Shown here: one piece after another, positions 8,509 through 61,878 of the stretch
Layout of the letters: the number at the start of each line of letters is the position of its first letter
Numbering within the stretch: the first letter of the stretch is position 1
Virus record (IMG/VR): IMGVR_UViG_3300021137_000001
Span: 62,001-126,000 of that record
Reading direction: 5' to 3' (one strand)
DNA length: 64,000 nucleotides
Translations under genes and position numbers: made by a program
Notes under the pieces: model-generated
Database searches by the model: none
Told to the model about the DNA's origin: nothing
Seen by the model: only the letters and a program-made list of their open reading frames with translations

Positions 8509-8520
8509 TAGAGAACATAT

Positions 8521-9108
8521 ATGAAAATTAATGAAATATTAGCAGAAAGTACTGTAGACGAAGGCTTTGTTGACTTTGCAAAAAAAGTAGGTGGTGCATT
8601 CTCAGCTGCAAAACAAGGATATCAAACATCACAGGTATCGAGACAGCAAGCAGATCAAACTACTAAAGTTGTTACTACTGCATTACAGAAATGGATTGCA
8701 ATTAATCAAAATATATTGGCATCAGGTCAACAATCTACACCAACACAAGCAGTACAATGGTATACTAACTTTTCTGGTAAAGCACCGACTGCACCGCCAG
8801 CAAACACAACAGATACAGTAATGAAACAATGGCTTGCAAAAGAGATTTCTAATTTTATGGCAATCCGTGCATTAGGACCAGCTGCAACTCCACCGGCACC
8901 AACTCGCACAGGGGGTAAGGTAGCAGGCAAAGTAAGTCAATCAGCAAGTGCTGTCAGACAACGTCAAGCACGTGCTAATAAAACAACAGTAACACCACAA
9001 CCGAAGGTAACACCACAGCCAACAATAGGTGGCCTAGGACCAAATGATCCTAGATATGCGGCATTAGCGGCTGCAACTAAAAATGCGTCAGCAACTCCAA
9101 CAGTTTAG
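8521..9108 (+). CDS. Putative virion/internal head protein (MKINEILAES leader)
   Basis: Shared leader; Ala/Thr/Gln/Pro-rich. Confidence 0.5.
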   Translation: MKINEILAESTVDEGFVDFAKKVGGAFSAAKQGYQTSQVSRQQADQTTKVVTTALQKWIAINQNILASGQQSTPTQAVQWYTNFSGKAPTAPPANTTDTVMKQWLAKEISNFMAIRALGPAATPPAPTRTGGKVAGKVSQSASAVRQRQARANKTTVTPQPKVTPQPTIGGLGPNDPRYAALAAATKNASATPTV

Positions 9109-18458: not shown

Positions 18459-20777
18459 TTGAGTATCATTCAAGTAATAAAACGTAGCGGTAGTCGTGCC
18501 CCACTTGCAGTAGAGAAATGGCAGGCACAGATTGCAAAGGTATGTGCTGGCATTGCAGATGTAAGTCAGTCAATGATTGAAATTAAAGCGCAACCACACT
18601 TTTATGATGGCATTAGCACACGAGAGATTGATGAAATCACTTTACGTGCTATCGTTGACTTAATTGACATCGAACATAATCCAGACATCGGACATACAAA
18701 CTATCAATACGTAGCAGGTAAACAGCGTTTATCGATGTTACGTAAAGACGTCTATGGTGATTACGAAGTTCCTCGCTTATATGAAATTGTTAAAACAAAC
18801 GTAGCAACGGGCTTGTATACAGCAGAGCTACTAGAGTGGTATACTGAAGCAGAATGGGATAAGATGGATGCGTTCATTGACCATACTAAAGACGAAGCAT
18901 ATAGTTACGCGGCGATTGCACAACTAATTGAAAAATATCTTGTACGTAATCGTGCAACACATCAAATTTACGAAACTCCGCAAGTGCGTTATATGGTAGC
19001 GGCCGCAACAGTATTTCACAAAGAAGAGCCAGCAACTGCTCGCTTGAAGTTTATTAAAGAGTATTACATTTGTGCAAGTGACAGCCTTTTCACCCTTGCA
19101 ACACCTGTCCTCGCCGGCCTAGGTACACCAACTAAACAGTTTAGTTCGTGTGTACTAATTAAAGCAGACGATGACTTAGATAGTATTTTTGCTTCTGGTG
19201 AGATGATGGCAAAGTACGCAAGTAAACGTGCTGGTATTGGTCTTGAGATTGGTCGTTTGCGTCCACAGGGCAGTCCGATACGCGGTGGTGAAATTATGCA
19301 CACAGGTATGATTCCATTCTTAAAGAAATGGTTTGGTGATTTGCGTAGTTGTTCACAAGGTGGCATACGTAACGCAAGTGCAACAGTATTCTACCCAATT
19401 TGGCATCACCAGTTTGATGATTTAATTGTACTTAAAAACAATCAAGGCACAGAAGAAACCCGTGTACGTCATATGGACTATGGTGTTGTATTGTCTGCAT
19501 TCTTTTGGAGACGTTTTAAAAATAAAGAAAACATTACATTCTTTGACCCAAATGAAGTACCTGAACTATACGAAGCATTTTACAGCAATACAGAATTATT
19601 TGAAGAACTTTATGTTAAGTATGAAAAACGTAAAGATTTGCGTACTAAAACAATGTCAGCTGAAGAAGTATTTAAAGGTGGCATACTAAAAGAACGTACG
19701 GACACAGGTCGTATCTATCTTGTGTTTATTGATAACGTTATGAAACAAGGACCATTTGATCCAGAATATCATACAATTTATCAGAGTAACTTATGTTGCG
19801 AGATTTTATTACCTACATTACCATTTAAACGCTTGGATGATGCTAGCGGTCGTATTGCACTATGTACACTTGGTAGTATTAATTGGGGATCGTTCCGCAA
19901 CCCAGAAGACATGCGTCGTGCTTGCCGTATCTTACAACGTAGCTTATGCAACATTTTGGATTATCAGGACTTCTTAAGCATACAAAGCAAACTAAGCAAT
20001 GATGAATTACAACCACTTGGCATCGGCATTACTAACTTAGCCTACTGGCATGCTAAACGTTCATTTAAATATGGCGAGAAAGATGCATTAGCAGAAGTTA
20101 AGAGTTGGATGGAACATCAGGCATTTTACTTAACAGAAGCAACAGTTGAACTGGCTAAAGAACGCGGCCCATGTTTAGATTCAGCAAAAACACGTTACGG
20201 TCAAGGACAGTTTCCTTGGGAGAATCGTGCAGATGGTGTTAATGAACTTGCTGACTTTACTCCAGAGCTTGATTGGGAAACGCTACGAGTTAACATGAAA
20301 CAATATGGTGTACGCAATTCAACACTAATGGCAATTGCGCCAGTTGAATCTAGTTCAGTAGTTATTAACAGCACTAACGGTATTGAAATGCCAATGAGTT
20401 TGATTAGTGTTAAAGAAAGTAAAGCTGGGTCATTTACGCAAGTTGTTCCGGAATATCATAAATTGAAAAATAAATATCAATTAATGTGGGAACAGAAAGA
20501 TTGCGATGCGTACTTAAAAACTGCAGCAGTACTTGCGGCTTATGTGGATCAGAGCATAAGTACTAATACATTCTATTCGCCGGCACACTTTCCAGACAGA
20601 AAAGTGCCATCGACATTAATTGCTAAGAATCTAATGCAGGCACATATTTGGGGTCTAAAGACCTTCTATTATAGCCTCGTGAATAAACAAGGTAGTAAGA
20701 TGACAGCAGAAGTGGCCCCGGAAATGGCACCAATAGATTATGATGACGAGGATGATTGTGCCGGATGTAAGCTCTAG
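18459..20777 (+). CDS. nrdA: Class Ia ribonucleotide reductase alpha subunit
   Basis: ATP cone (VIKRSG), SSC, SNLCCEI, LKTFYY, C-terminal CAGC. Confidence 0.97.
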   Translation: MSIIQVIKRSGSRAPLAVEKWQAQIAKVCAGIADVSQSMIEIKAQPHFYDGISTREIDEITLRAIVDLIDIEHNPDIGHTNYQYVAGKQRLSMLRKDVYGDYEVPRLYEIVKTNVATGLYTAELLEWYTEAEWDKMDAFIDHTKDEAYSYAAIAQLIEKYLVRNRATHQIYETPQVRYMVAAATVFHKEEPATARLKFIKEYYICASDSLFTLATPVLAGLGTPTKQFSSCVLIKADDDLDSIFASGEMMAKYASKRAGIGLEIGRLRPQGSPIRGGEIMHTGMIPFLKKWFGDLRSCSQGGIRNASATVFYPIWHHQFDDLIVLKNNQGTEETRVRHMDYGVVLSAFFWRRFKNKENITFFDPNEVPELYEAFYSNTELFEELYVKYEKRKDLRTKTMSAEEVFKGGILKERTDTGRIYLVFIDNVMKQGPFDPEYHTIYQSNLCCEILLPTLPFKRLDDASGRIALCTLGSINWGSFRNPEDMRRACRILQRSLCNILDYQDFLSIQSKLSNDELQPLGIGITNLAYWHAKRSFKYGEKDALAEVKSWMEHQAFYLTEATVELAKERGPCLDSAKTRYGQGQFPWENRADGVNELADFTPELDWETLRVNMKQYGVRNSTLMAIAPVESSSVVINSTNGIEMPMSLISVKESKAGSFTQVVPEYHKLKNKYQLMWEQKDCDAYLKTAAVLAAYVDQSISTNTFYSPAHFPDRKVPSTLIAKNLMQAHIWGLKTFYYSLVNKQGSKMTAEVAPEMAPIDYDDEDDCAGCKL

Positions 20778-38195: not shown

Positions 38196-38253
38196 GTAGA
38201 TGCCTGATTAGGGTCTACGGCTATTACTTGCTTTTTAAAAGGAGAAATATATG
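38196..38253 (+). promoter_or_regulatory. ROSE-like RNA thermometer candidate in the dnaK 5' UTR
   Basis: GTAGA..TCTAC hairpin, then CTTGCT pairing with the SD AGGAG around a bulged G. Confidence 0.55.
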
Positions 38254-40167
38254 AGCAAAAATATCGTTCTAGGAATCGACCTCGGAACTACAAATAGTTG
38301 CGTCGCAATTTATGAAAATAACAAACCCCGTATAATTGAAAATAATGAAGGCGCACGTACTACACCATCAATCGTTGCTTATGGCGATGAGATTATTGTT
38401 GGCGCAAGTGCTAAACGTCAGTCAGTTACCAATCCAAAGAACACAATTTACGCAAGCAAACGACTTATTGGTCGCAAGTTTGACGAAGAAGCAGTACAAA
38501 AAGACATTGGCTTAATGCCATACAGTATCGTTAAGAACGTTAACGGTGATGCATGGGTAGAAGTTAACGGAGAGAAATTAGCACCTCCACAAATCTCAGC
38601 AGAAGTATTGCGCAAAATGAAATCAACCGCAGAAGACTATTTGGGTTATGCAGTAACGCAAGCAGTTATTACAGTACCAGCTTACTTCAATGATGCACAA
38701 CGTCAAGCAACTAAAGATGCAGGTCGTATTGCAGGCTTAGAAGTATTGCGTATTATTAACGAACCAACTGCAGCGGCATTAGCATTTGGTTGTGATAAAG
38801 GTGATAAAAAAGATCGCAAGATTGCTGTATATGACTTAGGTGGTGGTACATTTGACATTAGTATTATTGAAATTAGTGATGTAGATGGAGAGAAACAGTT
38901 TGAAGTACTTTCAACTAATGGCGATACATTCTTAGGTGGTGAAGACTTTGACCAACGTGTAATGGAATACTTAATCAGCGAGTTTAAGAAAGACTCTGGT
39001 ATTGATATTACTAAAGATATACTTGCACTACAACGCTTAAAAGAAGCCGCAGAGAAAGCAAAGATTGAGTTATCAAGCTCAACGCAAACAGAAGTAAATC
39101 TTCCATACATTACTGCTGACGCAACTGGTCCTAAGCATTTAGTTGTAAAACTTACCCGTGCTAAGTTCGAGAGTTTAGTTGAAGAACTAATTAAACGTTC
39201 AATTGATCCATGTAAGATTGCAGTTAAAGATTCTGGCATTAAAGTTAGCGACATTGATGATGTTATTCTTGTTGGCGGGCAAACACGTATGCCTAAAGTA
39301 CAAGAAGCTGTTGAAGCATTCTTTGGCAAAGCACCACGCAAAGACGTTAACCCAGATGAAGCAGTTGCAGTGGGTGCGGCAATTCAGGGTGCAGTGCTAG
39401 GTGGTGACAAAACAGACGTATTATTGCTTGATGTAACACCATTATCACTGGGAATTGAAACAATGGGTGGTATTATGACTAAGTTAATTAAGAAAAATAC
39501 AACTATCCCAACTAAAGCAAGCCAAACATTCTCTACAGCAGAGGATAATCAACCAGCTGTTACTGTTATGGTAGCACAAGGTGAGCGTGAATTTGTTAAA
39601 GACAACAAAGTACTTGGGCAGTTTAATTTAGAAGGTATCGCTCCAGCAATGCGCGGTGCTCCACAAATTGAAATTACACTAGACATTGATGCTAATGGTA
39701 TCTTAAAAGTAAGTGCTAAAGATAAAGCAACTGGCAAAGAAAACAAGATTACTATTAAAGCAAACAGTGGACTTACTGAAGCTGAAATTGAAGCAATGGT
39801 ACATGATGCAGAAGTTAATGCAGAAGCAGATACTAAGGCACGTGTAGTAGTCGAAGCAAAGAACGCGGCAGAAGCGCAAATCAATACAGTTAACAAAAAT
39901 CTTAAAGAACACGGCGATAAAATTACTGCTGAACAAAAGATTGAAATCGAAACTGCTATTACTGCGGCAGAAGCAACGTACACATCAGATGATGCAGAAG
40001 CAATTACTGCGGCAGTTGGTAAGGTATTTGAAGTTGCTAAACCATTGTTTGAAATTACTCAAGCACAAGAGTCGGCAACAGTTGAGCCAGGTGCGCAAAC
40101 AGAAACAGCGGCACAAGAAGGTGTTGTTGATGCAGAGTTTACGGAAGTTGATAAGGAGGCGAAATAA
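38251..40167 (+). CDS. dnaK: Hsp70 chaperone DnaK
   Basis: [32 protein letters not shown]. Confidence 0.98.
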
Positions 40168-54860: not shown

Positions 54861-55280
54861 ATGACTAAAAAAGATAAGATTTATAAATGTTTAAATTGTG
54901 ATGCTATAATTCCGTTTAAAGGATATACATATACACACAAATACTGTAATAATAAATGTCAAAGTGAGTTAAGAGCAAAAGATGCGCTCGATAAACACAA
55001 AGTGGCATTTTTTGAAGGAAGTTGTAAAAGTAGGCCGAGAATTAGGCAGATACTTGCAGAAATTCGCGGATATAAATGTGAATGCTGTGGATTGTCGGAG
55101 TGGCAAGGTAATTCGATTGTGTTGCAAGTGGATCATATTAATGGTGATCCATATAATGACAATCCGGATAACTTGAGACTTATTTGTCCTAATTGTCATA
55201 GCCAAACCGATACATTTGCTGGAGCCAATAGAGGTAACGGTAGATGGAGTAAAGAAGGACTTGCAAGGTATTACAAGTAA
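54861..55280 (+). mobile_element. HNH endonuclease upstream of tRNAs
   Basis: CECC, LQVDHING, NLRLICPNCH. Confidence 0.88.
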
Positions 55281-55293
55281 TTTAATTTTAATT

Positions 55294-55369
55294 GGGTCGA
55301 TAACTCACTCGGCGAGAGTACTGTGCTCATAACGCAGAAGGCAGGGATCATAACCCTGGCGACCCACCA
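55294..55369 (+). tRNA. tRNA-Met/Ile2 (CAT) with atypical T-loop
   Basis: Cloverleaf, loop CTCATAA, CCA; T-loop ATCATAA. Confidence 0.75.
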
Positions 55370-55374
55370 ACAAA

Positions 55375-55452
55375 GCGTCCGTAGCTCATCTGGACTAGAG
55401 CATGGGATTTCTACTCCCAGGGTAGCTGGTTCGAATCCAGCCGGGCGCACCA
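55375..55452 (+). tRNA. tRNA-Arg (TCT)
   Basis: TGGGA-TTTCTAC-TCCCA, GGTTCGAATCC, CCA. Confidence 0.92.
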
Positions 55453-55473
55453 CTTTTTATATAAGGAAACACA

Positions 55474-55665
55474 ATGAGAACAAAGTCAGAATTTGATATT
55501 GCAATGGAAGAATTTTTAGCCAACGGTGGCGAAGTAAAACAAATAGCACGTGGCGTACAAAGTGAAACAGCAACAACAAACTTCTGGGGCGCACCAAAGA
55601 AAAAAGCCGCAGTAGAAGCAGTAAATGAGTTAGGCGCAACAGGTATTGACGTAATAGAAGAATAA
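55474..55665 (+). CDS. Small hypothetical protein
   Basis: AAGGA SD; EEFLANGGEVKQI motif. Confidence 0.65.
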   Translation: MRTKSEFDIAMEEFLANGGEVKQIARGVQSETATTNFWGAPKKKAAVEAVNELGATGIDVIEE

Positions 55666-55722
55666 TAATATCAGTTCAAAAATAAAATATAAATATATTA
55701 GTAATAATGGAGGTAACTCGAC

Positions 55723-56370
55723 TTGCACAATCCTGTAGAAAAACCAACTTGGTTATATAAACCTATCGATGATATCCCTGAATTGAATAAAATTCAAAAG
55801 GAATGTTTTCGAATCTATTCGGCTGTAAAGAAAGATATATGCAAAGATGTTGGCTGGGCCATTGCTGGAATAGAATTAGATATAATGAAAAAACTTGCAC
55901 CAAATTATATTAATTTTTTAAAAAAATTAGGGTTATACGAGATTTATGCCGGTACAGCATTTTCTGCTAGTATAGGGATACAAAAATATCCTTGTCCTGT
56001 ACACGTTGATTGTAAAGACTGGCGCCAATTACCATTTTCACTTAATATACCAGTTGTTGGATGTGAGGATAGTTATACTGTTTTTTATGATGTTGATGAA
56101 TCATCCGATCCTGCAAACGCATTACCAGATACATGGGATAATAATTATATGAAAATGAATAAAATTGAAGGAGTGGTCGGATATTCCGAAAAAACAGCAA
56201 AAGAAATTGGCAGAATGCCTGCTACCCAACCTGCATTTGTAAACATTGGTATTCCTCACCGCCCTGTGACAAATCATACTAATCTAAGATTAGTTATGTT
56301 ATCGAGATTTACACCTGACATATTTGATTATGTAAATAATGACATATTTAAAACTAAATTATCAGAATAA
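55723..56370 (+). CDS. Putative 2OG-Fe(II)/cupin-like protein
   Basis: HVD...SLNIP...H pattern. Confidence 0.5.
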   Translation: MHNPVEKPTWLYKPIDDIPELNKIQKECFRIYSAVKKDICKDVGWAIAGIELDIMKKLAPNYINFLKKLGLYEIYAGTAFSASIGIQKYPCPVHVDCKDWRQLPFSLNIPVVGCEDSYTVFYDVDESSDPANALPDTWDNNYMKMNKIEGVVGYSEKTAKEIGRMPATQPAFVNIGIPHRPVTNHTNLRLVMLSRFTPDIFDYVNNDIFKTKLSE

Positions 56371-56411
56371 TACCAGTTCAAAAATAAATGATAAATAATT
56401 AGATAAAGTGC

Positions 56412-56440
56412 TTGACAAGAGTATAAATAGAATATATAAT
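56412..56440 (+). promoter_or_regulatory. Promoter of the tRNA array (sigma70 with nested late box)
   Basis: TTGACA-N17-TATAAT with TATAAATA inside the spacer. Confidence 0.85.
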
Positions 56441-56474
56441 AGTTGTATAAGTTAATAAGGAAGTGAGAAAACAA

Positions 56475-56600
56475 ATGTTCAAATCGTTACATCAGTTTAA
56501 GATATCAACACTCGTGCAGTTATGCGGCGTGTCTTCTTATTGGTCAGCGATTGAGATGAATACGAGTGATCGCGCACCGAATAGAAAGGGTTTAAGTTAA
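56475..56600 (+). CDS. Putative attenuator leader peptide (41 aa, all 20 amino acids)
   Basis: MFKSLHQFKISTLVQLCGVSSYWSAIEMNTSDRAPNRKGLS*; last codons form the antiterminator 5' arm. Confidence 0.65.
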   Translation: MFKSLHQFKISTLVQLCGVSSYWSAIEMNTSDRAPNRKGLS

Positions 56601-56661
56601 CGTTTATTATTATATATGAATTTTTACTTAAACCTTAGAATTAAAAACTCTAAGGTTTTTT
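56587..56661 (+). terminator. Antiterminator/terminator switch ahead of the tRNA array
   Basis: 56587-56597 pairs with 56626-56636; alternative terminator CCTTAGA/TCTAAGG plus T6. Confidence 0.75.
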
Positions 56662-56775
56662 GCTTTTAGCAGTAAGTGTTTTGGAAACGAGGTCCATAAC
56701 TAAACACTATAAAGATTGTAAGTTGAACGGGCGGAACTAGGGATGAAGCACCTTGTGTGGTGTGAAAAATCTAGC

Positions 56776-56856
56776 ATAATAAAGTACATTAATCGGCAAC
56801 TAGGTCCCACGCAATGTGGATTATGTCAGAGGCGAGTAATTAGTGTGCTTTATTAT
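56776..56856 (+). ncRNA. Long-stem small RNA unit 1
   Basis: 18-bp closing stem with two G-U pairs. Confidence 0.5.
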
Positions 56857-56900
56857 ACGCATTCACATGAGTGCGGTACACAATTTGTAGTGCATTTTGT

Positions 56901-56975
56901 CAGGGTATAGCTCAGCCTGGCCAGAGTCCTCGGTTTGGAACCGAGTTGTCGTAAGTTCGAATCTTACTACCCTGA
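56901..56975 (+). tRNA. tRNA-Pro (TGG), no encoded CCA
   Basis: CTCGG-TTTGGAA-CCGAG; acceptor stem extended by a flanking inverted repeat. Confidence 0.88.
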
Positions 56976-57080
56976 CAAAATGCATTACTTAAAAAGAGGT
57001 TAACACATACGGTAATTGGTAGTATAATAGCTACTTGAAGTTAAGTAATACGCTCTTTAACAGTTTGGAAGTTTTACAAT

Positions 57081-57153
57081 ATCGCATTCATCTAGTGGCC
57101 TAAGATACTGCCCTTTCACGGCAGGTACACGGATTCGAATTCCGTATGCGATA
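57081..57153 (+). tRNA. tRNA-Glu (TTC), no encoded CCA
   Basis: CTGCC-CTTTCAC-GGCAG; ATCGCAT/ATGCGAT acceptor. Confidence 0.88.
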
Positions 57154-57182
57154 CACATAGTAAATTTTGTATAAATACAAGT

Positions 57183-57794
57183 ATGACATATTACTACTTG
57201 TATCAAATCACTAATTTAGTGAATGCAAAAATTTACGTTGGAGTACATAAAACGAAATCATTAGATGACGGATATATGGGCTCTGGAAAAATTATTCAAT
57301 GTGCAATTAAAAAACACGGAATTGATAATTTTAAAAAAGACATACTTGAGACTTTTGACACATCAGAAGCTATGTATGCACGTGAGAAAGAAATAGTAAC
57401 AGATCAGTTTCTGTTACGCGAAGATACCTATAACTTACGTAGAGGCGGAACTGGCGGATTTGATTATATAAACAAGCAACCATGGGTGCATACTACAAAC
57501 AGGATAATAGGAGATATAAAGAAAAGTAAAACATTAAAAGGTAGACGCCCTTCTGAAAATACGTTAATAGCAGTAAGGTTAATGCATCAAGACGGAAGAG
57601 TAAAGTATGATACGTTTACTGGTAAACAGCATACCATCGAAACTAAACAAAAAATGTCAATTGCGAAAAAAGGAAAAGGATGCAATCAGCATAACAGTCA
57701 ATTCGGTACTATATGGATAACGGATGGTATAAGTAACAAAAAAATAAAGAAAGATGTTACTATTCCAGAAGGATGGAATAGAGGTAGAAGTTAA
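57183..57794 (+). mobile_element. GIY-YIG (SegB-like) homing endonuclease in the tRNA array
   Basis: YLYQITN...IYVGVH, YMGSG, YNLRRGG. Confidence 0.88.
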
Positions 57795-57798
57795 GACC

Positions 57799-57904
57799 AT
57801 ATTAAAACATATTTGACCAAGTCGGTGTTCCTTGATGCTAGGATTAGAGCGGACAGCAGTCCGCGAGATGTAGTTGCGATATTACAGCAAGTGTGTTTTA
57901 ATAT
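57799..57904 (+). ncRNA. Long-stem small RNA unit 2
   Basis: 17-bp closing stem with G-U pairs; internal GCGGAC/GTCCGC hairpin. Confidence 0.5.
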
Positions 57905-57915
57905 AGTAAGTCTAT

Positions 57916-57989
57916 TGGCTCATGGTGTAGTGGTAGCACAACAGGTTTTGATCCTGTTAGTTGTAGTTCGATTCTACATGGGCCTGCCA
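57916..57989 (+). tRNA. tRNA-Gln (TTG)
   Basis: ACAGG-TTTTGAT-CCTGT, CCA. Confidence 0.9.
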
Positions 57990-58058
57990 AGTTTTAATGG
58001 AGTGGAAATACCATACTATCAGTCCGTTATGTATAAATACATATATAGGAGAACTGAT

Positions 58059-58457
58059 ATGTTTAAGAACAGTAAGAAACAAGGTGACGCTGGATTAGGG
58101 CAAGCAATAGCATATTTTACAATGAAAGGATATGATGTTGCGTTGCCACTAACAGATAGCGCAGACTGGGATATGATTGTTGAGATAGATGGTGAACTTA
58201 AAAGAGTCCAAGTTAAAACATCTAAACAACTATCTAAAACGGGTATAATGATGTTTAATGCTAATGTAAATGGCGGCAACATGTCATTTAATAAAAAACC
58301 TAAACTTATACCAGAACAACAATGGGATTTATTGTTCTTACATCACTTAGTGACAAATAAGCAAGCATTGATTCCTAAAGAAGCACTAACTACAAAAGGT
58401 CAAGTGAACTTAGGTAGTAGTCAATGTAAGTATAAAGATTTTATGATTAATGGATGA
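58059..58457 (+). mobile_element. PD-(D/E)XK endonuclease (I-Ssp6803I-like family)
   Basis: KQGD..., WDMIVE..RVQVKT; AGGAG SD; stop overlaps tRNA-Tyr. Confidence 0.75.
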
Positions 58458-58537
58458 GCGGCGCAGTTGGAGAGGCGCGGGAGACTGTAAATCTCTTTTC
58501 CCTGAATGAGTAGGTTCGAATCTTACCTCATCCACCA
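58452..58537 (+). tRNA. tRNA-Tyr (GTA)
   Basis: GGAGA-CTGTAAA-TCTCT, long variable arm, CCA. Confidence 0.9.
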
Positions 58538-58542
58538 ATTTA

Positions 58543-58619
58543 GTTGTGTCGTCGGTTCGAAGCCAACCTGTAATCAAGCGAAATAGCAGTTACAGTAGTT
58601 TACTTGGTAAAACAACAAC
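58543..58619 (+). ncRNA. Circularly permuted, anticodon-less tRNA-like element
   Basis: T-arm and 3' acceptor strand precede the 5' acceptor strand and D-arm; ends pair GTTGT/ACAAC. Confidence 0.65.
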
Positions 58620-58651
58620 AATTTTTGTAGTAAATTTAATAGGAGCAACAC

Positions 58652-58672
58652 ATGAAGCGAGTTAAACTTTAG
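58652..58672 (+). CDS. Mini-ORF MKRVKL* upstream of tRNA-Lys
   Basis: AGGAG SD 6 nt before ATG; AAG and AAA codons. Confidence 0.65.
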   Translation: MKRVKL

Positions 58673-58743
58673 TGTCGTCTTTAATCCCATTGTACTGTAT
58701 TAAAGGTAACGGCACGTTAAATCTTTAATACAGTACAATGGGA
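58672..58743 (+). promoter_or_regulatory. Two-state RNA switch overlapping the tRNA-Lys 5' end
   Basis: Perfect 21-bp inverted repeat 58685-58705/58723-58743 versus alternative 58672-58685/58699-58715. Confidence 0.7.
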
Positions 58744-58815
58744 GTATGGTGAAATTGGTTATCACATGGGACTTTTAATCCTTCGTTCAGAGTTCAAGTC
58801 TCTGTGCTCCTACCA
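58740..58815 (+). tRNA. tRNA-Lys (TTT)
   Basis: Loop CTTTTAA; weak anticodon stem TGGGA/TCCTT; CCA. Confidence 0.85.
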
Positions 58816-58922
58816 TAAGAAAGTACATTGCTAACGCCTCTGAGAAGGGTTCCGGTAGTCCTGTATCAATTAATAGCTAAGTCAGCAGATGGGTTCGCTG
58901 AATGTAGTGTACTTCCTTATGG
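58813..58922 (+). ncRNA. Long-stem small RNA unit 3
   Basis: About 18-bp closing stem beginning at the tRNA-Lys CCA. Confidence 0.5.
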
Positions 58923-58929
58923 TTTCAAT

Positions 58930-59004
58930 GTTGTTTATAGTGTAGCGATAACACCCCATCCTGTGAAGATGGTATCACGAGTTTGAACCTCGTTAGACAA
59001 CCCA
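58930..59004 (+). tRNA. tRNA-His (GTG)
   Basis: G-1:C73, CCATC-CTGTGAA-GATGG, CCA. Confidence 0.88.
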
Positions 59005-59062
59005 ACTTTTAATATGGCTTCCGTCCGTAGAATACTGCTTGCAGTCGGCCCGGAAGTTCTTT

Positions 59063-59137
59063 GGCCGATTCGTATAATGATCATTACACGGGATTGTCTA
59101 TCCTGCTATGAGAGTTTGATTCTCTCATCGGTCGCCA
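59063..59137 (+). tRNA. tRNA-Asp (GTC)
   Basis: CGGGA-TTGTCTA-TCCTG, G73, CCA. Confidence 0.88.
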
Positions 59138-59200
59138 AGTTTTAAAATAATAGTTGACAGTGTGTATTAGAACTGTTACACTATGTAGATAGTAACAAAT

Positions 59201-59329
59201 AAGTATTTGGAAGAAAGTCGCAACTTAATGTATTCGTGGGAAGGAGAGTGCGACATCCCGTCCGAAAGAGTAGGTGATGCTACGGTGTAACTCCGTCATT
59301 TGAATTACTGTATGATTCTGCACATACTT
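59201..59329 (+). ncRNA. Candidate structured RNA after an internal promoter
   Basis: AAGTAT/ATACTT closure, GTCGCA/TGCGAC, possible GGGA/TCCC pseudoknot, ACGG/CCGT hairpin. Confidence 0.4.
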
Positions 59330-59360
59330 AACAGGCATGTATTTGCCGCAGAACTTATAT

Positions 59361-59435
59361 CGCGGAGTGGGGAAGTGGCAACCCGGAAGGCTCATAACCT
59401 TTAGATCGGCAGTTCGAATCTGTCCTCCGCAACCA
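59361..59435 (+). tRNA. Initiator tRNA-fMet (CAT)
   Basis: C1xA72 mismatch, CTCATAA loop, CCA. Confidence 0.88.
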
Positions 59436-59440
59436 GTAAT

Positions 59441-59515
59441 GCCGCCTTAGCTCATTTGGTAGAGCAACGCACTTGTAATGCGTAGGCGCCCAGTTCGAAC
59501 CCGGGAGGCGGACCA
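59441..59515 (+). tRNA. tRNA-Thr (TGT), acceptor 3' strand one nt short
   Basis: ACGCA-CTTGTAA-TGCGT; ends AGGCGGACCA. Confidence 0.8.
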
Positions 59516-59523
59516 ATTTTAAT

Positions 59524-59597
59524 GCGGCTATGATGTAATGGTAACCTAAAACTTTGCCAAAGTTTAATCGCGAGTTCGATTCTCGCTAGCCGCTCCA
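59524..59597 (+). tRNA. tRNA-Gly (GCC)
   Basis: AAACT-TTGCCAA-AGTTT, U73, CCA. Confidence 0.9.
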
Positions 59598-59661
59598 AAT
59601 TTTGCTTGACAAAATGTCAAAACGAATGTATAATACACTTAATTAAAAAAAGGAGGCTGAC

Positions 59662-60054
59662 ATGTACTACGATGAAGTAAAGTTTGAAGAATTAAAAGGT
59701 AAGGTATTAGTTAGTGCAACAGTCTCTGACTATAAAGATGAAATGAAGTTTGTAACAACAGACGGCGAAATATATACTTTGTATCACGCACAAGATTGTT
59801 GTGAATCAGTGGAAATTGAATCTATCGTTGGTGACTTAGCTGATTTAGTTGGCGAAGAAATCTTAATGGCAGAAGAAGCACAAAACTTATTTGACTTGAT
59901 TAAATCTGCAGGAGTCGAAGAAGAAGATGAATACGGTTCACACACTTGGACATTTTACAAACTAGCAACTCGCAAAGGGTACGTTGACATCAGATGGTAT
60001 GGTTCGAGCAACGGGTACTATTCAGAGGAAGTTTCTTTTAAAAGAGAGAAATAA
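59662..60054 (+). CDS. Conserved phage hypothetical protein
   Basis: HAQDCCESV, WTFYKL, SNGYYSE; sigma70 promoter and AGGAGG SD. Confidence 0.75.
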   Translation: MYYDEVKFEELKGKVLVSATVSDYKDEMKFVTTDGEIYTLYHAQDCCESVEIESIVGDLADLVGEEILMAEEAQNLFDLIKSAGVEEEDEYGSHTWTFYKLATRKGYVDIRWYGSSNGYYSEEVSFKREK

Positions 60055-60055
60055 T

Positions 60056-60217
60056 ATGACTTCTAAAAAACCACAGTGGGTTAAAGATAAAGAAGCACTG
60101 CAAACTGCGCCCCCAGAGACAATTATTATAATTGGCAAAATGGGCGCAGATGGTGTTATTAACGGTCGGCTACCGAGCGGTGAAATCTATCATCGCAATA
60201 AAAGGCAACATAGATAA
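60056..60217 (+). CDS. Hypothetical protein
   Basis: Short ORF in operon. Confidence 0.5.
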   Translation: MTSKKPQWVKDKEALQTAPPETIIIIGKMGADGVINGRLPSGEIYHRNKRQHR

Positions 60218-60588
60218 TGGACTTTACAATTGACCCAGAGTACTTAACAAGTGTAACTATTCGCGATGAGTGGAACACGTATACACGTAATGGTCGTGTA
60301 CCTACAGCAGAAGAACTTATTTTAATTATTCAAGGCAAGGGTGAGTGCTCGACTACTAGTTCAGCCGACCACCCAGAGTTTGCTAAGTTACGTGAGGAAC
60401 TAGGTTTGCTACGTTATATTCATATACAGCGTAGTTGGTGGAATGGCGATAGTGTATTAAAACCATTCACACTTAACGGAAGAAAGTTTAAGGTAGGAGC
60501 ACAGTTTAGCAGTGGTAGTGCAATGGGTACACACCTTATTGTACGTGCTAAACACCCAGAATATTATAAGGATGAATATGATGATTAA
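60217..60588 (+). CDS. Hypothetical protein
   Basis: Coupled ORF. Confidence 0.65.
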   Translation: MDFTIDPEYLTSVTIRDEWNTYTRNGRVPTAEELILIIQGKGECSTTSSADHPEFAKLREELGLLRYIHIQRSWWNGDSVLKPFTLNGRKFKVGAQFSSGSAMGTHLIVRAKHPEYYKDEYDD

Positions 60589-61066
60589 ACCATGGATTGA
60601 AAACGTTAGTATGAAAGACGTACAAGTAGGCGAGCACTTTGATGCTGGCACTAACTCTATGCTTATTCAAATCGTTGACCCTATTACTCTTTTTCCAACA
60701 CCAAAGTTTGCATTTAAAGAAGTGCATCAGTTTAAGTTTTTAGATGCAGAAGATACTGACGTTGCAGAGTACGGCGAAGAGCCATTGATTAGCGATCAGC
60801 AAGCAGAAGCAATTTTACAGTTGCTACAACGTGCGCTAGCCGACAATATGAACATTGTTGTACATTGTCACGCTGGTTTATGTCGTAGTGGTGCAGTAGT
60901 AGAAATTGGTGTTATGATGGGCTTTAGAGATACTGAAAAGTTTCGCAGTCCTAACCTACGTGTTAAACACAAACTAATGAAATTGCTTGGGCTAACACAT
61001 AACCCAGATGAGCAACACAACTGGCGTGATGATTATAGACATCACTTAACTAAAAGCAATATGTAA
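60578..61066 (+). CDS. Protein-tyrosine/dual-specificity phosphatase-like protein
   Basis: VHCHAGLCRS (CX5R). Confidence 0.85.
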   Translation: MMIKPWIENVSMKDVQVGEHFDAGTNSMLIQIVDPITLFPTPKFAFKEVHQFKFLDAEDTDVAEYGEEPLISDQQAEAILQLLQRALADNMNIVVHCHAGLCRSGAVVEIGVMMGFRDTEKFRSPNLRVKHKLMKLLGLTHNPDEQHNWRDDYRHHLTKSNM

Positions 61067-61077
61067 AGGAGTAGTAC

Positions 61078-61272
61078 ATGATTAAGTTATCCCCAACGGG
61101 TAAGATATCCAAAAATGCTAACAAAGAACTTTGTCTTAACACCGAGTTCAAAGTTAGCATTGATGTACGTAATGTAACGTACGATAACATTGATGAAAAG
61201 ATTGCTGAGCTTATTGCAGAGGCACACAAAGTCAAACAAGTACTCGAACAAAACATAGTAACATCAAATTAA
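61078..61272 (+). CDS. Hypothetical protein
   Basis: AAGGAG SD. Confidence 0.6.
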   Translation: MIKLSPTGKISKNANKELCLNTEFKVSIDVRNVTYDNIDEKIAELIAEAHKVKQVLEQNIVTSN

Positions 61273-61280
61273 AAGAATAC

Positions 61281-61356
61281 GCAACCTTAGCTCATCTGGT
61301 AGAGCACCTGCTTGAAGCGCAGGGTGTGTTTGGTTCAAGTCCAAGAGGTTGCACCA
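61281..61356 (+). tRNA. tRNA-Phe (GAA)
   Basis: CCTGC-TTGAAGC-GCAGG, CCA. Confidence 0.9.
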
Positions 61357-61383
61357 AACAGTAAATACATAAAAGGGCAGTAT

Positions 61384-61878
61384 ATGAAAAAACTGAATTT
61401 CGATGAAGTAAGTGAATTTATCAATGCACAAAGTGATGAAACTAAAATCTACATTGGCGGTGATAGCACACGCTTTCGTAAGAATGGTGTATGGCATGCA
61501 GAATACACTATGGCAATTGTAGTACACATTGATGGCAAACATGGTTGTAAAATCTTTGGCGAAAGCTCAACTGAAATTGATTACGACCAAAAACGTAATC
61601 GCCCAAGTATGCGTCTAATGAATGAAGTGTACAAAATTAGTGAACTATACTTAAAACTACACGAAGTATTAGAAGGGCGTGATGTTGCTGTACACTTAGA
61701 TATTAACCCAAACGAAGCACACGGTTCAAGCTGTGTTGTGTCACAAGCAATAGGCTACATTCGTGGTACTTGCAACGTTATCCCAATGGTTAAACCTCAT
61801 GCGTGGGCTGCATCGTATTGTGCGGACCGCTTGAAGGAAGTTATGGCAATGCAGGAAAATCAACGCAAAATAGCCTAA
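61384..61878 (+). CDS. RNase H-like YkuK/DUF458 protein
   Basis: IYIGGDS, RLMNEV, VHLDIN, KP..AAS..AD. Confidence 0.78.
   Translation: MKKLNFDEVSEFINAQSDETKIYIGGDSTRFRKNGVWHAEYTMAIVVHIDGKHGCKIFGESSTEIDYDQKRNRPSMRLMNEVYKISELYLKLHEVLEGRDVAVHLDINPNEAHGSSCVVSQAIGYIRGTCNVIPMVKPHAWAASYCADRLKEVMAMQENQRKIA

What the first reader, a model, noticed from the sequence alone, without database searches (positions are those of the whole stretch)
55294..61356. The tRNA region reads as an integrated, regulated anti-tRNA-depletion module
Thirteen tRNAs are interleaved with an attenuator, a Lys switch, a permuted mimic, long-stem small RNAs and endonucleases. Several tRNAs deviate from consensus: Lys anticodon stem with U-U and G-U, fMet with only two of the three anticodon-stem G-C pairs, Phe with G37, Met/Ile2 with T-loop ATCATAA, Thr one nt short. 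Known: anticodon-arm variants let phage tRNAs evade host anticodon nucleases. Inference: a sensing plus resistant-replacement system.
Basis: inference. Interest (0 to 1): 0.65.

Follow-up and report, generated by a model that had tools for sequence, protein, structure and literature searches.

The report
Eroded phage tRNA island with novel RNAs
This is the tRNA gene island of an uncultured 329-kb freshwater jumbo phage, cut down to 13 tRNAs from the roughly 25 its relatives carry and invaded by selfish endonuclease genes. It holds three conserved structured RNAs that match no described family, and nothing in the sequence shows it senses tRNA depletion.

Summary
All 13 tRNAs and all five quoted deviations are real. 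Contigs from four independent freshwater runs reproduce them, so they are not assembly errors.

Compared with about 180 related viral contigs, the deviations fall into two groups:
- **Conserved, selected variants.** Phe G37 occurs in 28 of 29 distinct relatives and in cultured Klebsiella and Ralstonia phages.
- **Private lesions.** Thr has lost C72. Pro has A37 where all 26 distinct relative sequences have G37, and no encoded CCA.

Relatives carry 20-31 tRNAs here, so this island is an eroded mosaic, not a purpose-built module. The two endonucleases are homing-type genes, like SegB in the T4 tRNA cluster.

The spacers hold real RNAs:
- a 214-nt RNA before tRNA-Pro (23 of 52 pairs covary);
- a 55-nt pseudoknot motif that sits in tRNA slots of 57 viral contig stretches (P1, P2 and the pseudoknot all covary);
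- a permuted tRNA-like element resembling the tRNA domain of YrlA, but below Rfam's threshold and without a Ro gene.

No lysine riboswitch or T-box is present. The "attenuator" is a conserved promoter, small ORF and terminator of unproven function. The host is unknown, so resistance to anticodon nucleases could not be tested.

The parts
55294..55369 (+). tRNA with CAT anticodon, probably tRNA-Ile2 (AUA reader). T-loop is ATCATAA; A7.G66 mismatch.
   Evidence: (40.4 bits). L024/26/27 carry a 97%-identical copy with the same T-loop and a compensatory 4:69 change. The Ile2 call rests on synteny (Ser-CAT-Arg(TCT)) and is an inference.
55375..55452 (+). tRNA-Arg(TCT), canonical, CCA encoded
   Evidence: (62.3 bits)
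55474..55665 (+). 63-aa ORF with a borderline match to the SutA RNA-polymerase-binding domain
   Evidence: Pfam PF20661, E = 8e-7, 28.8 bits against a cut-off of 29.3. Conserved in 19 related loci.
55723..56370 (+). 215-aa ORF found only in this phage; HxD motif, possibly a 2OG-Fe(II) oxygenase-like cupin
   Evidence: No Pfam or PHROG hit. No non-self locus. The atlas search gives viral hypothetical clusters and one Asp_Arg_Hydrox lead at 0.93.
56412..56440 (+). Perfect sigma-70 promoter (TTGACA, 17 nt, TATAAT), conserved in relatives
   Evidence: 12 of 12 matches; alignment
56475..56600 (+). Small ORF of 41 codons with a Shine-Dalgarno site. It stays open in 11 relatives and all its indels are in frame.
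   Evidence: Variable sites show no third-position excess (19/22/20), so the act of translation may matter more than the peptide (inference).
56631..56661 (+). Intrinsic terminator (8-bp stem plus a T run), with compensatory changes among relatives
56667..56880 (+). R2: a conserved structured RNA of about 214 nt (7 helices) just upstream of tRNA-Pro. No Rfam family matches it.
   Evidence: Across 15 distinct sequences, 96.2% of cells are paired, 23 of 52 pairs change on both sides, 0 of 500 shuffles reach this, and slid controls give 7 or fewer. The overlapping ORF is broken in relatives. Single copy in the genome.
56901..56976 (+). tRNA-Pro(TGG) with A37 and no encoded CCA. The flanks (56889-56900 and 56974-56986) pair and extend the acceptor stem by 12-13 pairs (a perfect 10-bp inverted repeat plus the discriminator and neighbouring pairs).
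   Evidence: -48.5 kcal/mol, z = -6.1. All 26 distinct relative Pro(TGG) sequences have G37. An independent contig matches with 0 differences.
57000..57028 (+). Sigma-70 promoter (11 of 12 matches) ahead of tRNA-Glu
57081..57154 (+). tRNA-Glu(TTC), A1-U72, no encoded CCA
57183..57794 (+). GIY-YIG / NUMOD3 homing endonuclease gene (Seg-like)
   Evidence: Pfam PF19835, PF07460, PF01541. PHROG 314, E = 2e-44. Its flanking spacers are unique to this phage, and its relatives elsewhere in the arrays are only about 50% identical.
57916..57989 (+). tRNA-Gln(TTG), U1.U72. It is 97% identical to the Gln that sits at a different array position in L012/13.
58059..58457 (+). PD-(D/E)XK endonuclease gene (PDDEXK_5), found only in this phage
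   Evidence: Pfam PF11645, E = 2e-13. No non-self locus.
58452..58537 (+). tRNA-Tyr(GTA), long variable arm, canonical anticodon loop
58537..58623 (+). Permuted tRNA-like element. Order: outer stem, T-arm, hairpin with an invariant 16-nt loop, then UA and a D-arm.
   Evidence: Aligns to the tRNA-like domain of Rfam YrlA (model positions 17-92, 24.1 bits, local E = 0.0024; gathering score 69 not met). The L017 homologue also aligns. Helix changes are compensatory, but only 3 distinct sequences exist.
58652..58672 (+). Six-codon mini-ORF (MKRVKL) behind an AGGAG site, conserved in three phages
   Evidence: No evidence of function.
58686..58742 (+).
   Evidence: -35.3 kcal/mol, z = -10. L005 and L204 carry imperfect versions. 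The only Rfam matches are chance miRNA-type hairpin hits.
58740..58815 (+). tRNA-Lys(TTT), U27.U43 and G28.U42; 3' side of the anticodon arm reads U36-A-A-U-C-C41
   Evidence: The same variant occurs in L204.
58930..59004 (+). tRNA-His(GTG) with G-1 encoded opposite C73
59005..59062 (+). His-Asp spacer containing a hairpin; 98% identical in L005 and L009
59063..59137 (+). tRNA-Asp(GTC) with U37 (loop TTGTCTA)
   Evidence: 7 of 25 distinct relative Asp tRNAs carry a pyrimidine at 37, with compensatory stem changes.
59154..59182 (+). Sigma-70 promoter (TTGACA, 17 nt, TACACT, preceded by TG), conserved in 8 relatives
59196..59360 (+). R1: a structured leader RNA upstream of tRNA-fMet
   Evidence: 93.9% of cells paired, 17 of 41 pairs change on both sides, 0 of 500 shuffles reach this.
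59207..59265 (+). Core of R1: a roughly 55-nt pseudoknot motif. P1, AGAAA, P2, a conserved loop (GUAUUCG..AGGAGAG), and a pseudoknot that is GGGA/UCCC here.
   Evidence: 57 IMG/VR stretches matched the pattern; 32 distinct sequences (with the window's own) were aligned. P1, P2 and the pseudoknot all covary; the pseudoknot is paired in 100% of sequences as GGUU/AACC, GCAU/AUGC or GGGA/UCCC. In other phages it fills tRNA-array slots 5-15 nt from its neighbours.
59361..59435 (+). Initiator tRNA (C1xA72) with A29-U41 and two G-C pairs
   Evidence: Shared with L005/7, L009 and L019/20. L010/12/24/30 keep the canonical three G-C pairs.
59441..59514 (+). tRNA-Thr(TGT) lacking C72 (G1 unpaired or opposite A); A52.C62 mismatch in the T-stem
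   Evidence: Close relatives read GGCGGCACCA. Confirmed in independent runs.
59524..59597 (+). tRNA-Gly(GCC), 99% identical to L005
59606..59634 (+). Perfect sigma-70 promoter for the protein-and-tRNA-Phe unit
59662..61272 (+). Five ORFs: DUF7448 (59662-60054), 53 aa (60056-60217), 123 aa (60217-60588), a Cys-phosphatase of the DSP/PTP type with an HCX5R motif (60572-61066), and 64 aa (61078-61272)
   Evidence: The phosphatase is conserved in 36 related loci and the 123-aa ORF in 24.
61281..61356 (+). tRNA-Phe(GAA) with G37
   Evidence: 28 of 29 distinct relatives have G37. Also G37 in Klebsiella phage VLCpiM5b and Ralstonia phage RsoM2USA.
61384..61878 (+). RNase H-like protein (PF04308/DUF458), starting 27 nt after tRNA-Phe
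   Evidence: Pfam E = 4e-15. In 50 of 76 loci a tRNA ends 13-46 nt upstream of the gene. The same arrangement is seen in cultured Stenotrophomonas phage DLP_6. The model has an RNase H-like fold.

Best explanation
The region is the tRNA gene island of an uncultured freshwater jumbo phage (329 kb, 37% G+C, distantly related to the PA5oct / Atu_ph07 group). It is a mosaic, partly eroded version of a roughly 25-tRNA island that this phage clade keeps around an RNase H-like gene. Host-type sigma-70 promoters drive at least four transcription units that mix tRNAs, small proteins and structured RNAs. Host RNase P, 3' trimming enzymes and the host CCA-adding enzyme would release the tRNAs, and as a by-product the tRNA-sized structured RNAs lying between them. 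The tRNAs mainly read the A-ending codons the phage prefers and keep translation going when host tRNAs run short, which may include attack by tRNA-cleaving defences. Two free-standing homing endonuclease genes are selfish passengers that shuffle tRNA cassettes between co-infecting phages. Shown here: the genes, promoters, terminator, RNA structures and their conservation. Inferred: expression, processing, charging and any role in defence evasion.
For: 13 tRNAs, all in this cluster. Relatives carry 20-31 tRNAs in the same place. This phage lacks Trp and the whole Leu-to-Arg block between Thr and Gly(GCC), and the junction fits a single deletion. The helicase places it near PA5oct, Atu_ph07 and XaC1. 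The phage prefers A-ending codons (GAA 0.79, AAA 0.74, CAA 0.80, CCA 0.54, ACA 0.49), and its U34 tRNAs read exactly these; 52% of all codons are readable by the 13 tRNAs. Consensus promoters lie at 56412, 57000, 59154, 59606 and 61907, two of them aligned and conserved in relatives. Compensatory changes in the orthologues of the CAT, fMet, Asp and Phe tRNAs argue that these are working molecules. The endonuclease genes are GIY-YIG/NUMOD3 and PD-(D/E)XK, with flanks unique to this phage. This matches SegB in the T4 tRNA cluster and the general segB-tRNA association (PMC2330249, PMC13096335). R2, R1 and the pseudoknot motif show strong covariation, and the motif sits in tRNA-like slots 5-15 nt from neighbouring tRNAs. 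The genome encodes no CCA-adding enzyme, Rnl1, RtcB or TilS, so maturation must rely on the host.
Against: No RNA data exist for this phage, so transcription, processing and charging are unproven. Codon supply alone does not explain the losses: tRNAs for the heavily used TTA, GCA and GTA codons are gone while rarer readers remain. Clade-wide oddities (Phe G37, Asp with a pyrimidine at 37) suggest selection beyond plain codon supply. The conserved small ORF plus terminator ahead of R2 and tRNA-Pro, and the hairpin overlapping tRNA-Lys, could be regulatory.
Confidence: 0.7

Rival explanations
1. One reading: an integrated module that senses tRNA depletion (through the attenuator, Lys switch and mimic) and answers by supplying nuclease-resistant replacement tRNAs.
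For: The set includes known nuclease targets (Lys-UUU, Thr-UGU, Tyr, fMet; PMC10264068, PMC12409363). tRNA-Lys carries C41 at the AriB cleavage site, a change that lowers cleavage of the E. coli tRNA (PMC12409363). A conserved promoter, small ORF and terminator precede R2 and tRNA-Pro. A hairpin and mini-ORF precede tRNA-Lys in three phages.
Against: No T-box, lysine riboswitch or other known sensor is present. The small ORF has no run of regulatory codons, and no mutually exclusive antiterminator emerges from the alignment. The island is a deletion-reduced mosaic. Thr minus C72 and Pro A37 are private to this phage and look damaging. tRNA-Lys keeps U39, the position whose change abolishes AriB cleavage. 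The host is unknown, so no host-versus-phage comparison was possible.
Confidence: 0.08
2. The embedded structured RNAs (pseudoknot motif, permuted tRNA-like element, R2) are themselves the counter-defence or takeover agents. They would act as decoys or inhibitors that bind tRNA-recognising host proteins such as nucleases, modification enzymes or RNase P.
For: The motif occupies tRNA slots in many phages and pairs variable stems with about 30 near-invariant unpaired bases, typical of a binding surface. The permuted element copies the T-arm, acceptor-like hairpin and D-arm order of YrlA, an RNA that tRNA enzymes recognise (PMC4201824).
Against: No binding partner is known. The permuted element has only three distinct sequences and scores far below YrlA's threshold. 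Junctions between adjacent tRNAs can imitate YrlA (PMC4201824). No Ro gene is present.
Confidence: 0.15
3. The pseudoknot motif is a ligand-binding aptamer or a self-cleaving ribozyme that controls or processes the tRNA transcripts.
For: It is compact and pseudoknotted with many invariant bases. In this phage it lies about 20 nt after a transcription start and is followed by further hairpins and a stem plus a U-rich tail just before tRNA-fMet.
Against: In most other phages it lies 5-13 nt from the next tRNA with no expression platform. No Rfam riboswitch or ribozyme model matches it.
Confidence: 0.12
4. Parts of the island are dead. At least tRNA-Thr (no C72) and tRNA-Pro (A37, no CCA, acceptor stem locked in a roughly 20-bp helix) are pseudogenes in a decaying cluster.
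For: Both lesions are unique to this phage, while close relatives are canonical. More than ten neighbouring tRNAs have already been lost. G1-C72 is a ThrRS identity pair and m1G37 prevents frameshifting on tRNA-Pro in E. coli (textbook knowledge).
Against: The same sequence persists unchanged in runs from 2012 and 2016. Both still score 51 and 61 bits as tRNAs. CCA repair could yield a tRNA-Thr with a G1.A72 mismatch.
Confidence: 0.3

Closest known systems
tRNA gene clusters of phages T4 and T5, with SegB or HNH homing endonucleases and, in T4, the stable species 1 and 2 RNAs
   Same: Clustered tRNA genes are co-transcribed from early promoters. Some lack an encoded CCA and depend on host enzymes. 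Free-standing GIY-YIG homing endonuclease genes sit among them (PMC2330249, PMC13096335). Non-tRNA small RNAs are embedded in the cluster; for T4 this last point is from my own knowledge.
   Different: This is an unrelated jumbo phage lineage with no detectable sequence similarity to cultured phages. The embedded RNAs match no Rfam family (the T4 stable RNAs themselves were not compared). No tRNA repair enzymes are encoded.
Nuclease-insensitive phage tRNAs (van den Berg 2023 hypothesis; T5 tRNA-Lys/Thr/Asn against PARIS AriB; T5 tRNA-Tyr against retron effectors)
   Same: The same isoacceptors are present (Lys-UUU, Thr-UGU, Tyr-GUA, fMet). Anticodon-arm bases differ from the E. coli type, including C41 in Lys.
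   Different: The host and its defences are unknown and no cleavage data exist. The strongest conserved deviations (Phe G37, Asp pyrimidine-37) are in tRNAs not known to be nuclease targets. tRNA-Lys keeps U39.
YrlA (Y RNA-like, Rfam RF02553)
   Same: The order is outer stem, T-arm, closed acceptor-like hairpin, then D-arm. The T-loop UUCGA and the D-loop GG are conserved.
   Different: It scores 24 bits against a gathering score of 69. It has no Ro-binding helix, and there is no Ro60 gene in the genome. It lies inside a tRNA array rather than beside rsr.
Large ornate or tRNA-associated phage RNAs (GOLLD, ROOL) and recently described bacterial tRNA mimics (skipping-rope and others)
   Same: Structured non-coding RNAs lie next to tRNA genes in phage DNA.
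   Different: There is no Rfam match to any of these families. R2 (214 nt) and the 55-nt pseudoknot are much smaller and unrelated in sequence.

Membership tests
Phage tRNA gene island | Several clustered tRNA genes with cloverleaf scores above threshold | tested here: met
   13 genes at 40-62 bits against a gathering score of 29
Phage tRNA gene island | Island conserved in related phages | tested here: met
   Of 182 related contigs found, the 80 fetched mostly carry 20-31 tRNAs around the same RNase H-like gene
Phage tRNA gene island | tRNAs expressed, matured and aminoacylated | not testable with these tools
   No RNA run holds the sequence
Nuclease-resistant replacement tRNAs | Phage tRNA differs from the host tRNA at the nuclease recognition or cleavage site | tested here: inconclusive
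   The host is unknown; the Phe-G37 scan of bacterial genomes did not identify it. Against the E. coli AriB site, tRNA-Lys has C41 but keeps U39 (PMC12409363).
Nuclease-resistant replacement tRNAs | Variant maintained by selection rather than drift | tested here: inconclusive
   Met for Phe G37, Asp pyrimidine-37, the CAT T-loop and the fMet 29:41 pair. Not met for Thr minus C72 and Pro A37, which are unique to this phage.
Nuclease-resistant replacement tRNAs | Resistance to cleavage demonstrated | not testable with these tools
   Needs in vitro or in vivo cleavage assays
Lysine riboswitch / T-box | Match to the family covariance model | tested here: not met
   No hit at E up to 5 across 55200-61500
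Leader-peptide transcription attenuator | Promoter, translated leader ORF and downstream intrinsic terminator | tested here: met
   All three are conserved in 10-11 relatives
Leader-peptide transcription attenuator | Run of regulatory codons in the leader, and a mutually exclusive antiterminator | tested here: not met
   No codon run. The consensus fold keeps only the terminator. A second hairpin is adjacent to it or only partly overlaps it (by eye).
YrlA / bacterial Y RNA | Rfam gathering score | tested here: not met
   24.1 and 21.7 bits against 69
YrlA / bacterial Y RNA | tRNA-like domain in the order T-arm, acceptor-like hairpin, D-arm | tested here: met
   Aligns to model positions 17-92. 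Compensatory changes seen across 3 sequences.
YrlA / bacterial Y RNA | Ro-binding helix and a neighbouring Ro60 (TROVE) gene | tested here: not met
   Model ends 1-16 and 93-114 are unmatched. No TROVE domain in the genome.
Seg-type GIY-YIG homing endonuclease | GIY-YIG catalytic domain plus a NUMOD DNA-binding motif | tested here: met
   PF19835, PF01541, PF07460; PHROG 314 at E = 2e-44
Seg-type GIY-YIG homing endonuclease | Free-standing gene, sporadic among relatives, located in a tRNA cluster | tested here: met
   Flanks are unique to this phage; homologues elsewhere in the arrays are about 50% identical
Seg-type GIY-YIG homing endonuclease | Site-specific cleavage and homing | not testable with these tools
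   Needs enzyme assays or co-infection crosses

The most novel reading that the evidence does not exclude
The tRNA arrays of this freshwater jumbo-phage clade carry a set of tRNA-sized non-tRNA RNAs: the 55-nt pseudoknot motif, the Ro-less permuted tRNA mimic and R2. These would be released by the tRNA-processing machinery and act on the host's tRNA-recognising proteins, for example as decoys for tRNA-cleaving defence nucleases. They would work alongside tRNAs whose position 37 has been re-coded (Phe G37, Asp U37) to escape host modification or cleavage.
Probability: 0.15. Interest if true: 0.8.

Novelty: new variant of a known kind. Interest (0 to 1): 0.5.

Why it matters
Phage tRNA islands are well known, and their role against tRNA-cleaving immunity is an active topic. 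The region as a whole is therefore expected biology.

What is new lies inside it:
- Two RNA families match nothing in Rfam and have strong covariation support. One is a compact pseudoknot that repeatedly takes the place of a tRNA in phage tRNA arrays.
- A YrlA-like permuted tRNA mimic occurs without any Ro partner.
- Conserved changes at position 37 break the usual bacterial rules. Phe G37 also occurs in Klebsiella and Ralstonia phages; Klebsiella's own tRNA-Phe should carry A37 like E. coli's (my own knowledge), and neither host's tRNA was checked here. A sub-family of tRNA-Asp carries a pyrimidine at 37.
- An RNase H-like gene (DUF458) and a Cys-phosphatase are consistently tied to phage tRNA arrays.

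Each of these gives a concrete handle for experiments on how large phages manage tRNA supply and processing.

Tried and rejected
- **Close relatives among deposited phages.** None found for the region or for either RNA.
- **Known RNA families.** The Rfam scan at permissive E-values found no T-box, lysine riboswitch, ribozyme, GOLLD/ROOL or Drum. The only hits were chance miRNA-type hairpin matches on the Lys hairpin and the weak YrlA match.
- **Y RNA reading.** Rejected as a family membership: below threshold, no Ro-binding stem, no TROVE gene.
- **Spacers as tRNA remnants.** Only short matches of 22-26 nt at E about 0.03. Relaxed ARAGORN gave implausible minus-strand calls.
- **tRNA repair or maturation enzymes.** Searches of the genome for a CCA-adding enzyme, Rnl1, RtcB and TilS all found nothing. 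The Rnl1 control rang in no reference genome, so that negative result is weak.
- **Host inference.** G37 is normal in CPR bacteria, Mollicutes, Lactobacillales and Staphylococcus, and scattered elsewhere, so it gave no host call.
- **Expression.** No RNA run holds the sequence.
- **Lys-His spacer 'long stem'.** Its energy is no better than shuffled sequence (z = -0.4).
- **Coding test on the small ORF.** No third-position bias.
- **Antiterminator search.** The consensus fold keeps only the terminator.
- **More copies of the permuted element.** The 16-mer scan gave mostly chance hits in coding DNA. The metagenome scan added one new variant.
- **PF04308 protein.** The fold search returned only generic RNase H-like folds (NurA, EndoV, RNase HI, PIWI) at TM 0.3-0.4. 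No sequence match to any solved structure.
- **First pattern scan for the pseudoknot motif.** It found nothing because I mis-counted a spacer. The corrected scan is.

Full report
**Source and setting**

The window is bases 62001-126000 of a 329,321-bp virus record with direct terminal repeats, at 37.4% G+C. The same sequence is metagenome contig Ga0214165_1000003. It is a freshwater phage: 24 DNA runs from lake and sediment metagenomes in 17 named studies hold all or part of the region, and none is an RNA run. Its replicative helicase is closest (46-50% identity) to those of jumbo phages PA5oct, Atu_ph07, Phosso and XaC1. No deposited phage shares nucleotide similarity beyond single tRNAs. The host is unknown. 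Perfect TTGACA-17-TATAAT promoters and a DnaK gene 66% identical to gammaproteobacterial DnaK point weakly to a proteobacterium.

ARAGORN and Rfam agree on 13 tRNA genes at 55294-61356, all on the + strand, and these are the only tRNAs in the genome.
- Lys has U27.U43 and G28.U42.
- The initiator (C1xA72) has A29-U41 and so only two G-C pairs.
- Phe has loop UUGAAGC, which is G37.
- The first CAT tRNA has T-loop AUCAUAA.
- Thr has acceptor 3' strand AGGCGG followed directly by ACCA, leaving G1 without its C72.

- Asp has U37.
- Pro has A37, no encoded CCA, and flanks that prolong its acceptor helix by 12-13 pairs (a perfect 10-bp inverted repeat plus the discriminator and neighbouring pairs; -48.5 kcal/mol, z = -6.1).
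- Glu starts A1-U72 and has no CCA.

These are not assembly errors. Contigs from four runs, dated 2012 and 2016, cover Pro and the His-Asp-fMet-Thr-Gly block with no differences and no gaps.

**What the relatives show**

The RNase H-like protein at 61384-61878 has relatives on 182 viral contigs, of which 80 were fetched. Most of those with enough flank carry 20-31 tRNAs around that gene, covering nearly all amino acids. This phage has 13. It lacks the Trp gene that relatives have between Asp and fMet. It also lacks the whole block (Leu, Leu, Gly-TCC, Ala, Val, Asn, Ile, Ser, Ser, Cys, Met, Arg) that relatives have between Thr and Gly-GCC. Here Thr and Gly-GCC are 9 nt apart, and the junction fits one deletion.

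The order is mosaic:
- The spacers around the two endonuclease genes exist only in this phage.
- Its tRNA-Gln is 97% identical to a Gln that sits elsewhere in the L012/13 array.
- Its Pro and Lys differ from those of L005, even though the adjoining spacers are 90-93% identical.

**Sorting the deviations**

Conserved variants:
- Phe G37 is found in 28 of 29 distinct relative sequences. It also occurs in cultured Klebsiella phage VLCpiM5b and Ralstonia jumbo phage RsoM2USA, but not in Stenotrophomonas phage DLP_6.
- The CAT tRNA with the odd T-loop has a 97%-identical copy in L024/26/27 with a compensatory 4:69 change. Similar AUCGUAA loops occur in L008 and L030. By synteny with Ser-CAT-Arg(TCT), it is probably the AUA-reading tRNA-Ile2 (inference).
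- The initiator's A29-U41 is shared by a sub-clade (L005/7, L009, L019/20). More distant relatives keep three G-C pairs, so the change is a compensated substitution.
- tRNA-Asp with a pyrimidine at 37 makes up 7 of 25 distinct relative sequences and has compensatory stem changes. No other isoacceptor in about 700 distinct sequences has a pyrimidine there.
- The Lys stem variant recurs in one other phage.

Private changes:
- Thr lacks the C72 that its closest relatives have (they read GGCGGCACCA).
- Pro A37 stands against G37 in all 26 distinct relative sequences.

G37 in bacterial tRNA-Phe is not unique. It is the rule in CPR bacteria, Mollicutes, Lactobacillales and Staphylococcus, and it is scattered elsewhere, including phage-like tRNA arrays in Rhodoferax and Thiodiazotropha contigs. 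It may therefore mirror a host, or it may be a phage trait.

**Codon use**

The phage strongly prefers A-ending codons (GAA 0.79, AAA 0.74, CAA 0.80, CCA 0.54, ACA 0.49; ATA is 0.28 of Ile and AGA 0.27 of Arg). Its U34 tRNAs and the putative Ile2 read exactly these, and 52% of all codons are readable by the 13 tRNAs. This fits codon supply. However, readers of the heavily used TTA, GCA and GTA codons have been lost, so retention is not explained by codon use alone. A single deletion is the simpler account.

**The proteins in the island**

- 57183-57794 is a GIY-YIG/NUMOD3 homing endonuclease (PHROG 314, E = 2e-44).
- 58059-58457 is a PD-(D/E)XK endonuclease.

Both are absent from the same positions in relatives. 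This matches SegB in the T4 tRNA cluster (PMC2330249) and the general segB-tRNA association. SegB has recently been shown to amplify tRNA-Tyr so that the phage escapes Septu (PMC13096335).

Conserved island genes are:
- a Cys-phosphatase with an HCX5R loop (36 loci);
- a 123-aa protein (24 loci);
- a small protein with a borderline SutA RNA-polymerase-binding match (19 loci);
- the DUF458 RNase H-like protein.

In 50 of 76 loci a tRNA of varying identity ends 13-46 nt before the DUF458 start codon. The same arrangement holds in cultured phage DLP_6. The DUF458 model (pLDDT 77) has an RNase H-like fold with invariant acidic residues, and nothing more specific emerged.

The genome encodes no CCA-adding enzyme, RtcB, TilS or Ro60. 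An Rnl1 search was also negative, though its control was uninformative.

**The non-coding elements**

1. *Region 56412-56661.* It holds a perfect promoter, a 41-codon ORF with a Shine-Dalgarno site, and an intrinsic terminator, all conserved in 10-11 relatives. The ORF stays open and all its indels are in frame, but variable sites are spread evenly over codon positions. The layout resembles an attenuator. It has no regulatory codon run and no demonstrable antiterminator.

2. *R2, 56667-56880.* Seven helices. Across 15 distinct sequences, 96.2% of cells are paired and 23 of 52 pairs change on both sides. None of 500 shuffles reaches this, and slid controls give 7 or fewer. The ORF overlapping it is broken in relatives. 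It precedes tRNA-Pro, or in distant relatives the first tRNA of an array.

3. *R1, 59196-59360.* It follows a conserved promoter and precedes tRNA-fMet. Its core is a roughly 55-nt pseudoknot: P1, AGAAA, a 6-bp P2, a loop holding GUAUUCG and AGGAGAG, and four loop bases that pair just 3' of P2.

   A pattern that fixes only unpaired bases matched 57 IMG/VR stretches; with the window's own copy, 32 distinct sequences were aligned. All three helices covary. P2 is 97.9% paired with five of six pairs changing on both sides. The pseudoknot is 100% paired and takes three forms (GGUU/AACC, GCAU/AUGC, and GGGA/UCCC here). The covariation score is 0.62 against 0.18 in shuffles.

   In other phages the motif lies 5-15 nt from flanking tRNAs, for example between Tyr and Pro, Phe and Ser, or Ser and Ser. 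It therefore occupies a tRNA slot and would be freed by tRNA processing (inference).

4. *Permuted tRNA-like element, 58537-58623.* It aligns to the tRNA-like domain of Rfam YrlA: T-arm, closed acceptor-like hairpin, then UA and a D-arm, inside an outer stem. It scores 24.1 bits. Its homologue in L016-18 scores 21.7 bits. Compensatory changes occur in three helices, but only three distinct sequences exist.

It is far below the gathering score of 69, lacks the Ro-binding helix and has no Ro gene nearby. Junctions between adjacent tRNAs are a known source of false YrlA hits (PMC4201824).

5. *Hairpin at 58686-58742.* A perfect 23-bp hairpin overlaps G1-G3 of tRNA-Lys and follows a six-codon mini-ORF (MKRVKL). 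Imperfect versions exist in two other phages. Nothing identifies it as a switch.

6. *Other spacers.* The His-Asp spacer hairpin is 98% conserved. The Lys-His 'long stem' is not significant.

**Interpretation**

The best-supported reading is an ordinary kind of object in an unusual lineage. It is a phage tRNA island, eroded and shuffled, transcribed from host-type promoters and matured by host enzymes. It carries selfish endonuclease genes and several conserved structured RNAs of unknown function.

That phage tRNAs can neutralise tRNA-cleaving immunity is established for T5 (PMC12409363, PMC11555353) and proposed more generally (PMC10264068). It may well apply here. It cannot be tested without the host, and the two most striking private variants look like damage. 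Nothing supports a sensing function.

**Limits**

- There are no expression data and the host is unknown.
- Covariation counts can be inflated by shared ancestry, although the slid controls argue against that here.
- The Ile2 assignment, the processing model and all functional roles of the RNAs are inferences.

Noticed in passing
window 61384-61878; L001-L080; L209 3492-3974: The DUF458 (PF04308) RNase H-like gene is tied to phage tRNA arrays. In 50 of 76 related loci a tRNA of varying identity ends 13-46 nt before its start codon. The same holds in cultured Stenotrophomonas phage DLP_6. Its function is unknown; it has invariant acidic residues and an RNase H-like fold.
   Followed up: partly
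window 60572-61066: A Cys-phosphatase of the DSP/PTP type (loop HCHAGLCR) is conserved inside the tRNA island in 36 related loci, next to a conserved 123-aa protein of unknown function (60217-60588).
   Followed up: partly
window 55474-55665: A 63-aa ORF directly after tRNA-Arg has a borderline match to the RNA-polymerase-binding domain of Pseudomonas SutA (28.8 bits against a cut-off of 29.3). It is conserved in 19 relatives.
   Followed up: partly
L259 54-128 (Ralstonia phage RsoM2USA); L260 54-129 (Klebsiella phage VLCpiM5b): Cultured phages of Proteobacteria also encode tRNA-Phe with G37. Klebsiella's own tRNA-Phe should be the E. coli type with A37 (my own knowledge); neither host's tRNA was examined here. 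I found no paper discussing this.
   Followed up: partly
L056 11178, L057 11178, L059 11180, L067 12972: Several related phages carry a tRNA with anticodon CUA (an amber suppressor, which ARAGORN labels Pyl). This hints at TAG read-through or recoding in part of the clade. This phage has none.
   Followed up: no
L024 about 8500-8630; also L014 and L020: Between R2 and tRNA-Pro, some relatives hold an extra element of about 85 nt with a T-arm (TGGGTTCGATTCCCA) and an acceptor-like stem. ARAGORN does not call it a tRNA.
   Followed up: no
L134 (Rhodoferax antarcticus ANT.BR contig) 246-2939; L159 (Thiodiazotropha MAG): Dense tRNA arrays (21 and 8 genes), including Phe with G37, lie on bacterial contigs. 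They look like prophage or other mobile tRNA arrays.
   Followed up: no
window 38251-40167: The phage encodes a full-length DnaK (Hsp70) that is 66% identical to gammaproteobacterial DnaK. The window also holds a ribonucleotide reductase large subunit (18459-20777) and a DnaB-like helicase (5128-6537).
   Followed up: partly
L005 1183-1311; L009, L010, L014: Some relatives have an extra 42-aa ORF with heptad-like repeats (MDKK...LLKKLSK) inserted between the terminator and R2. This means transcription must pass the terminator in those phages.
   Followed up: no
window 55723-56370: A 215-aa ORF with an HxD motif is unique to this phage and sits inside the island. Atlas features link it loosely to Asp/Arg hydroxylase-type cupins.
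   Followed up: partly
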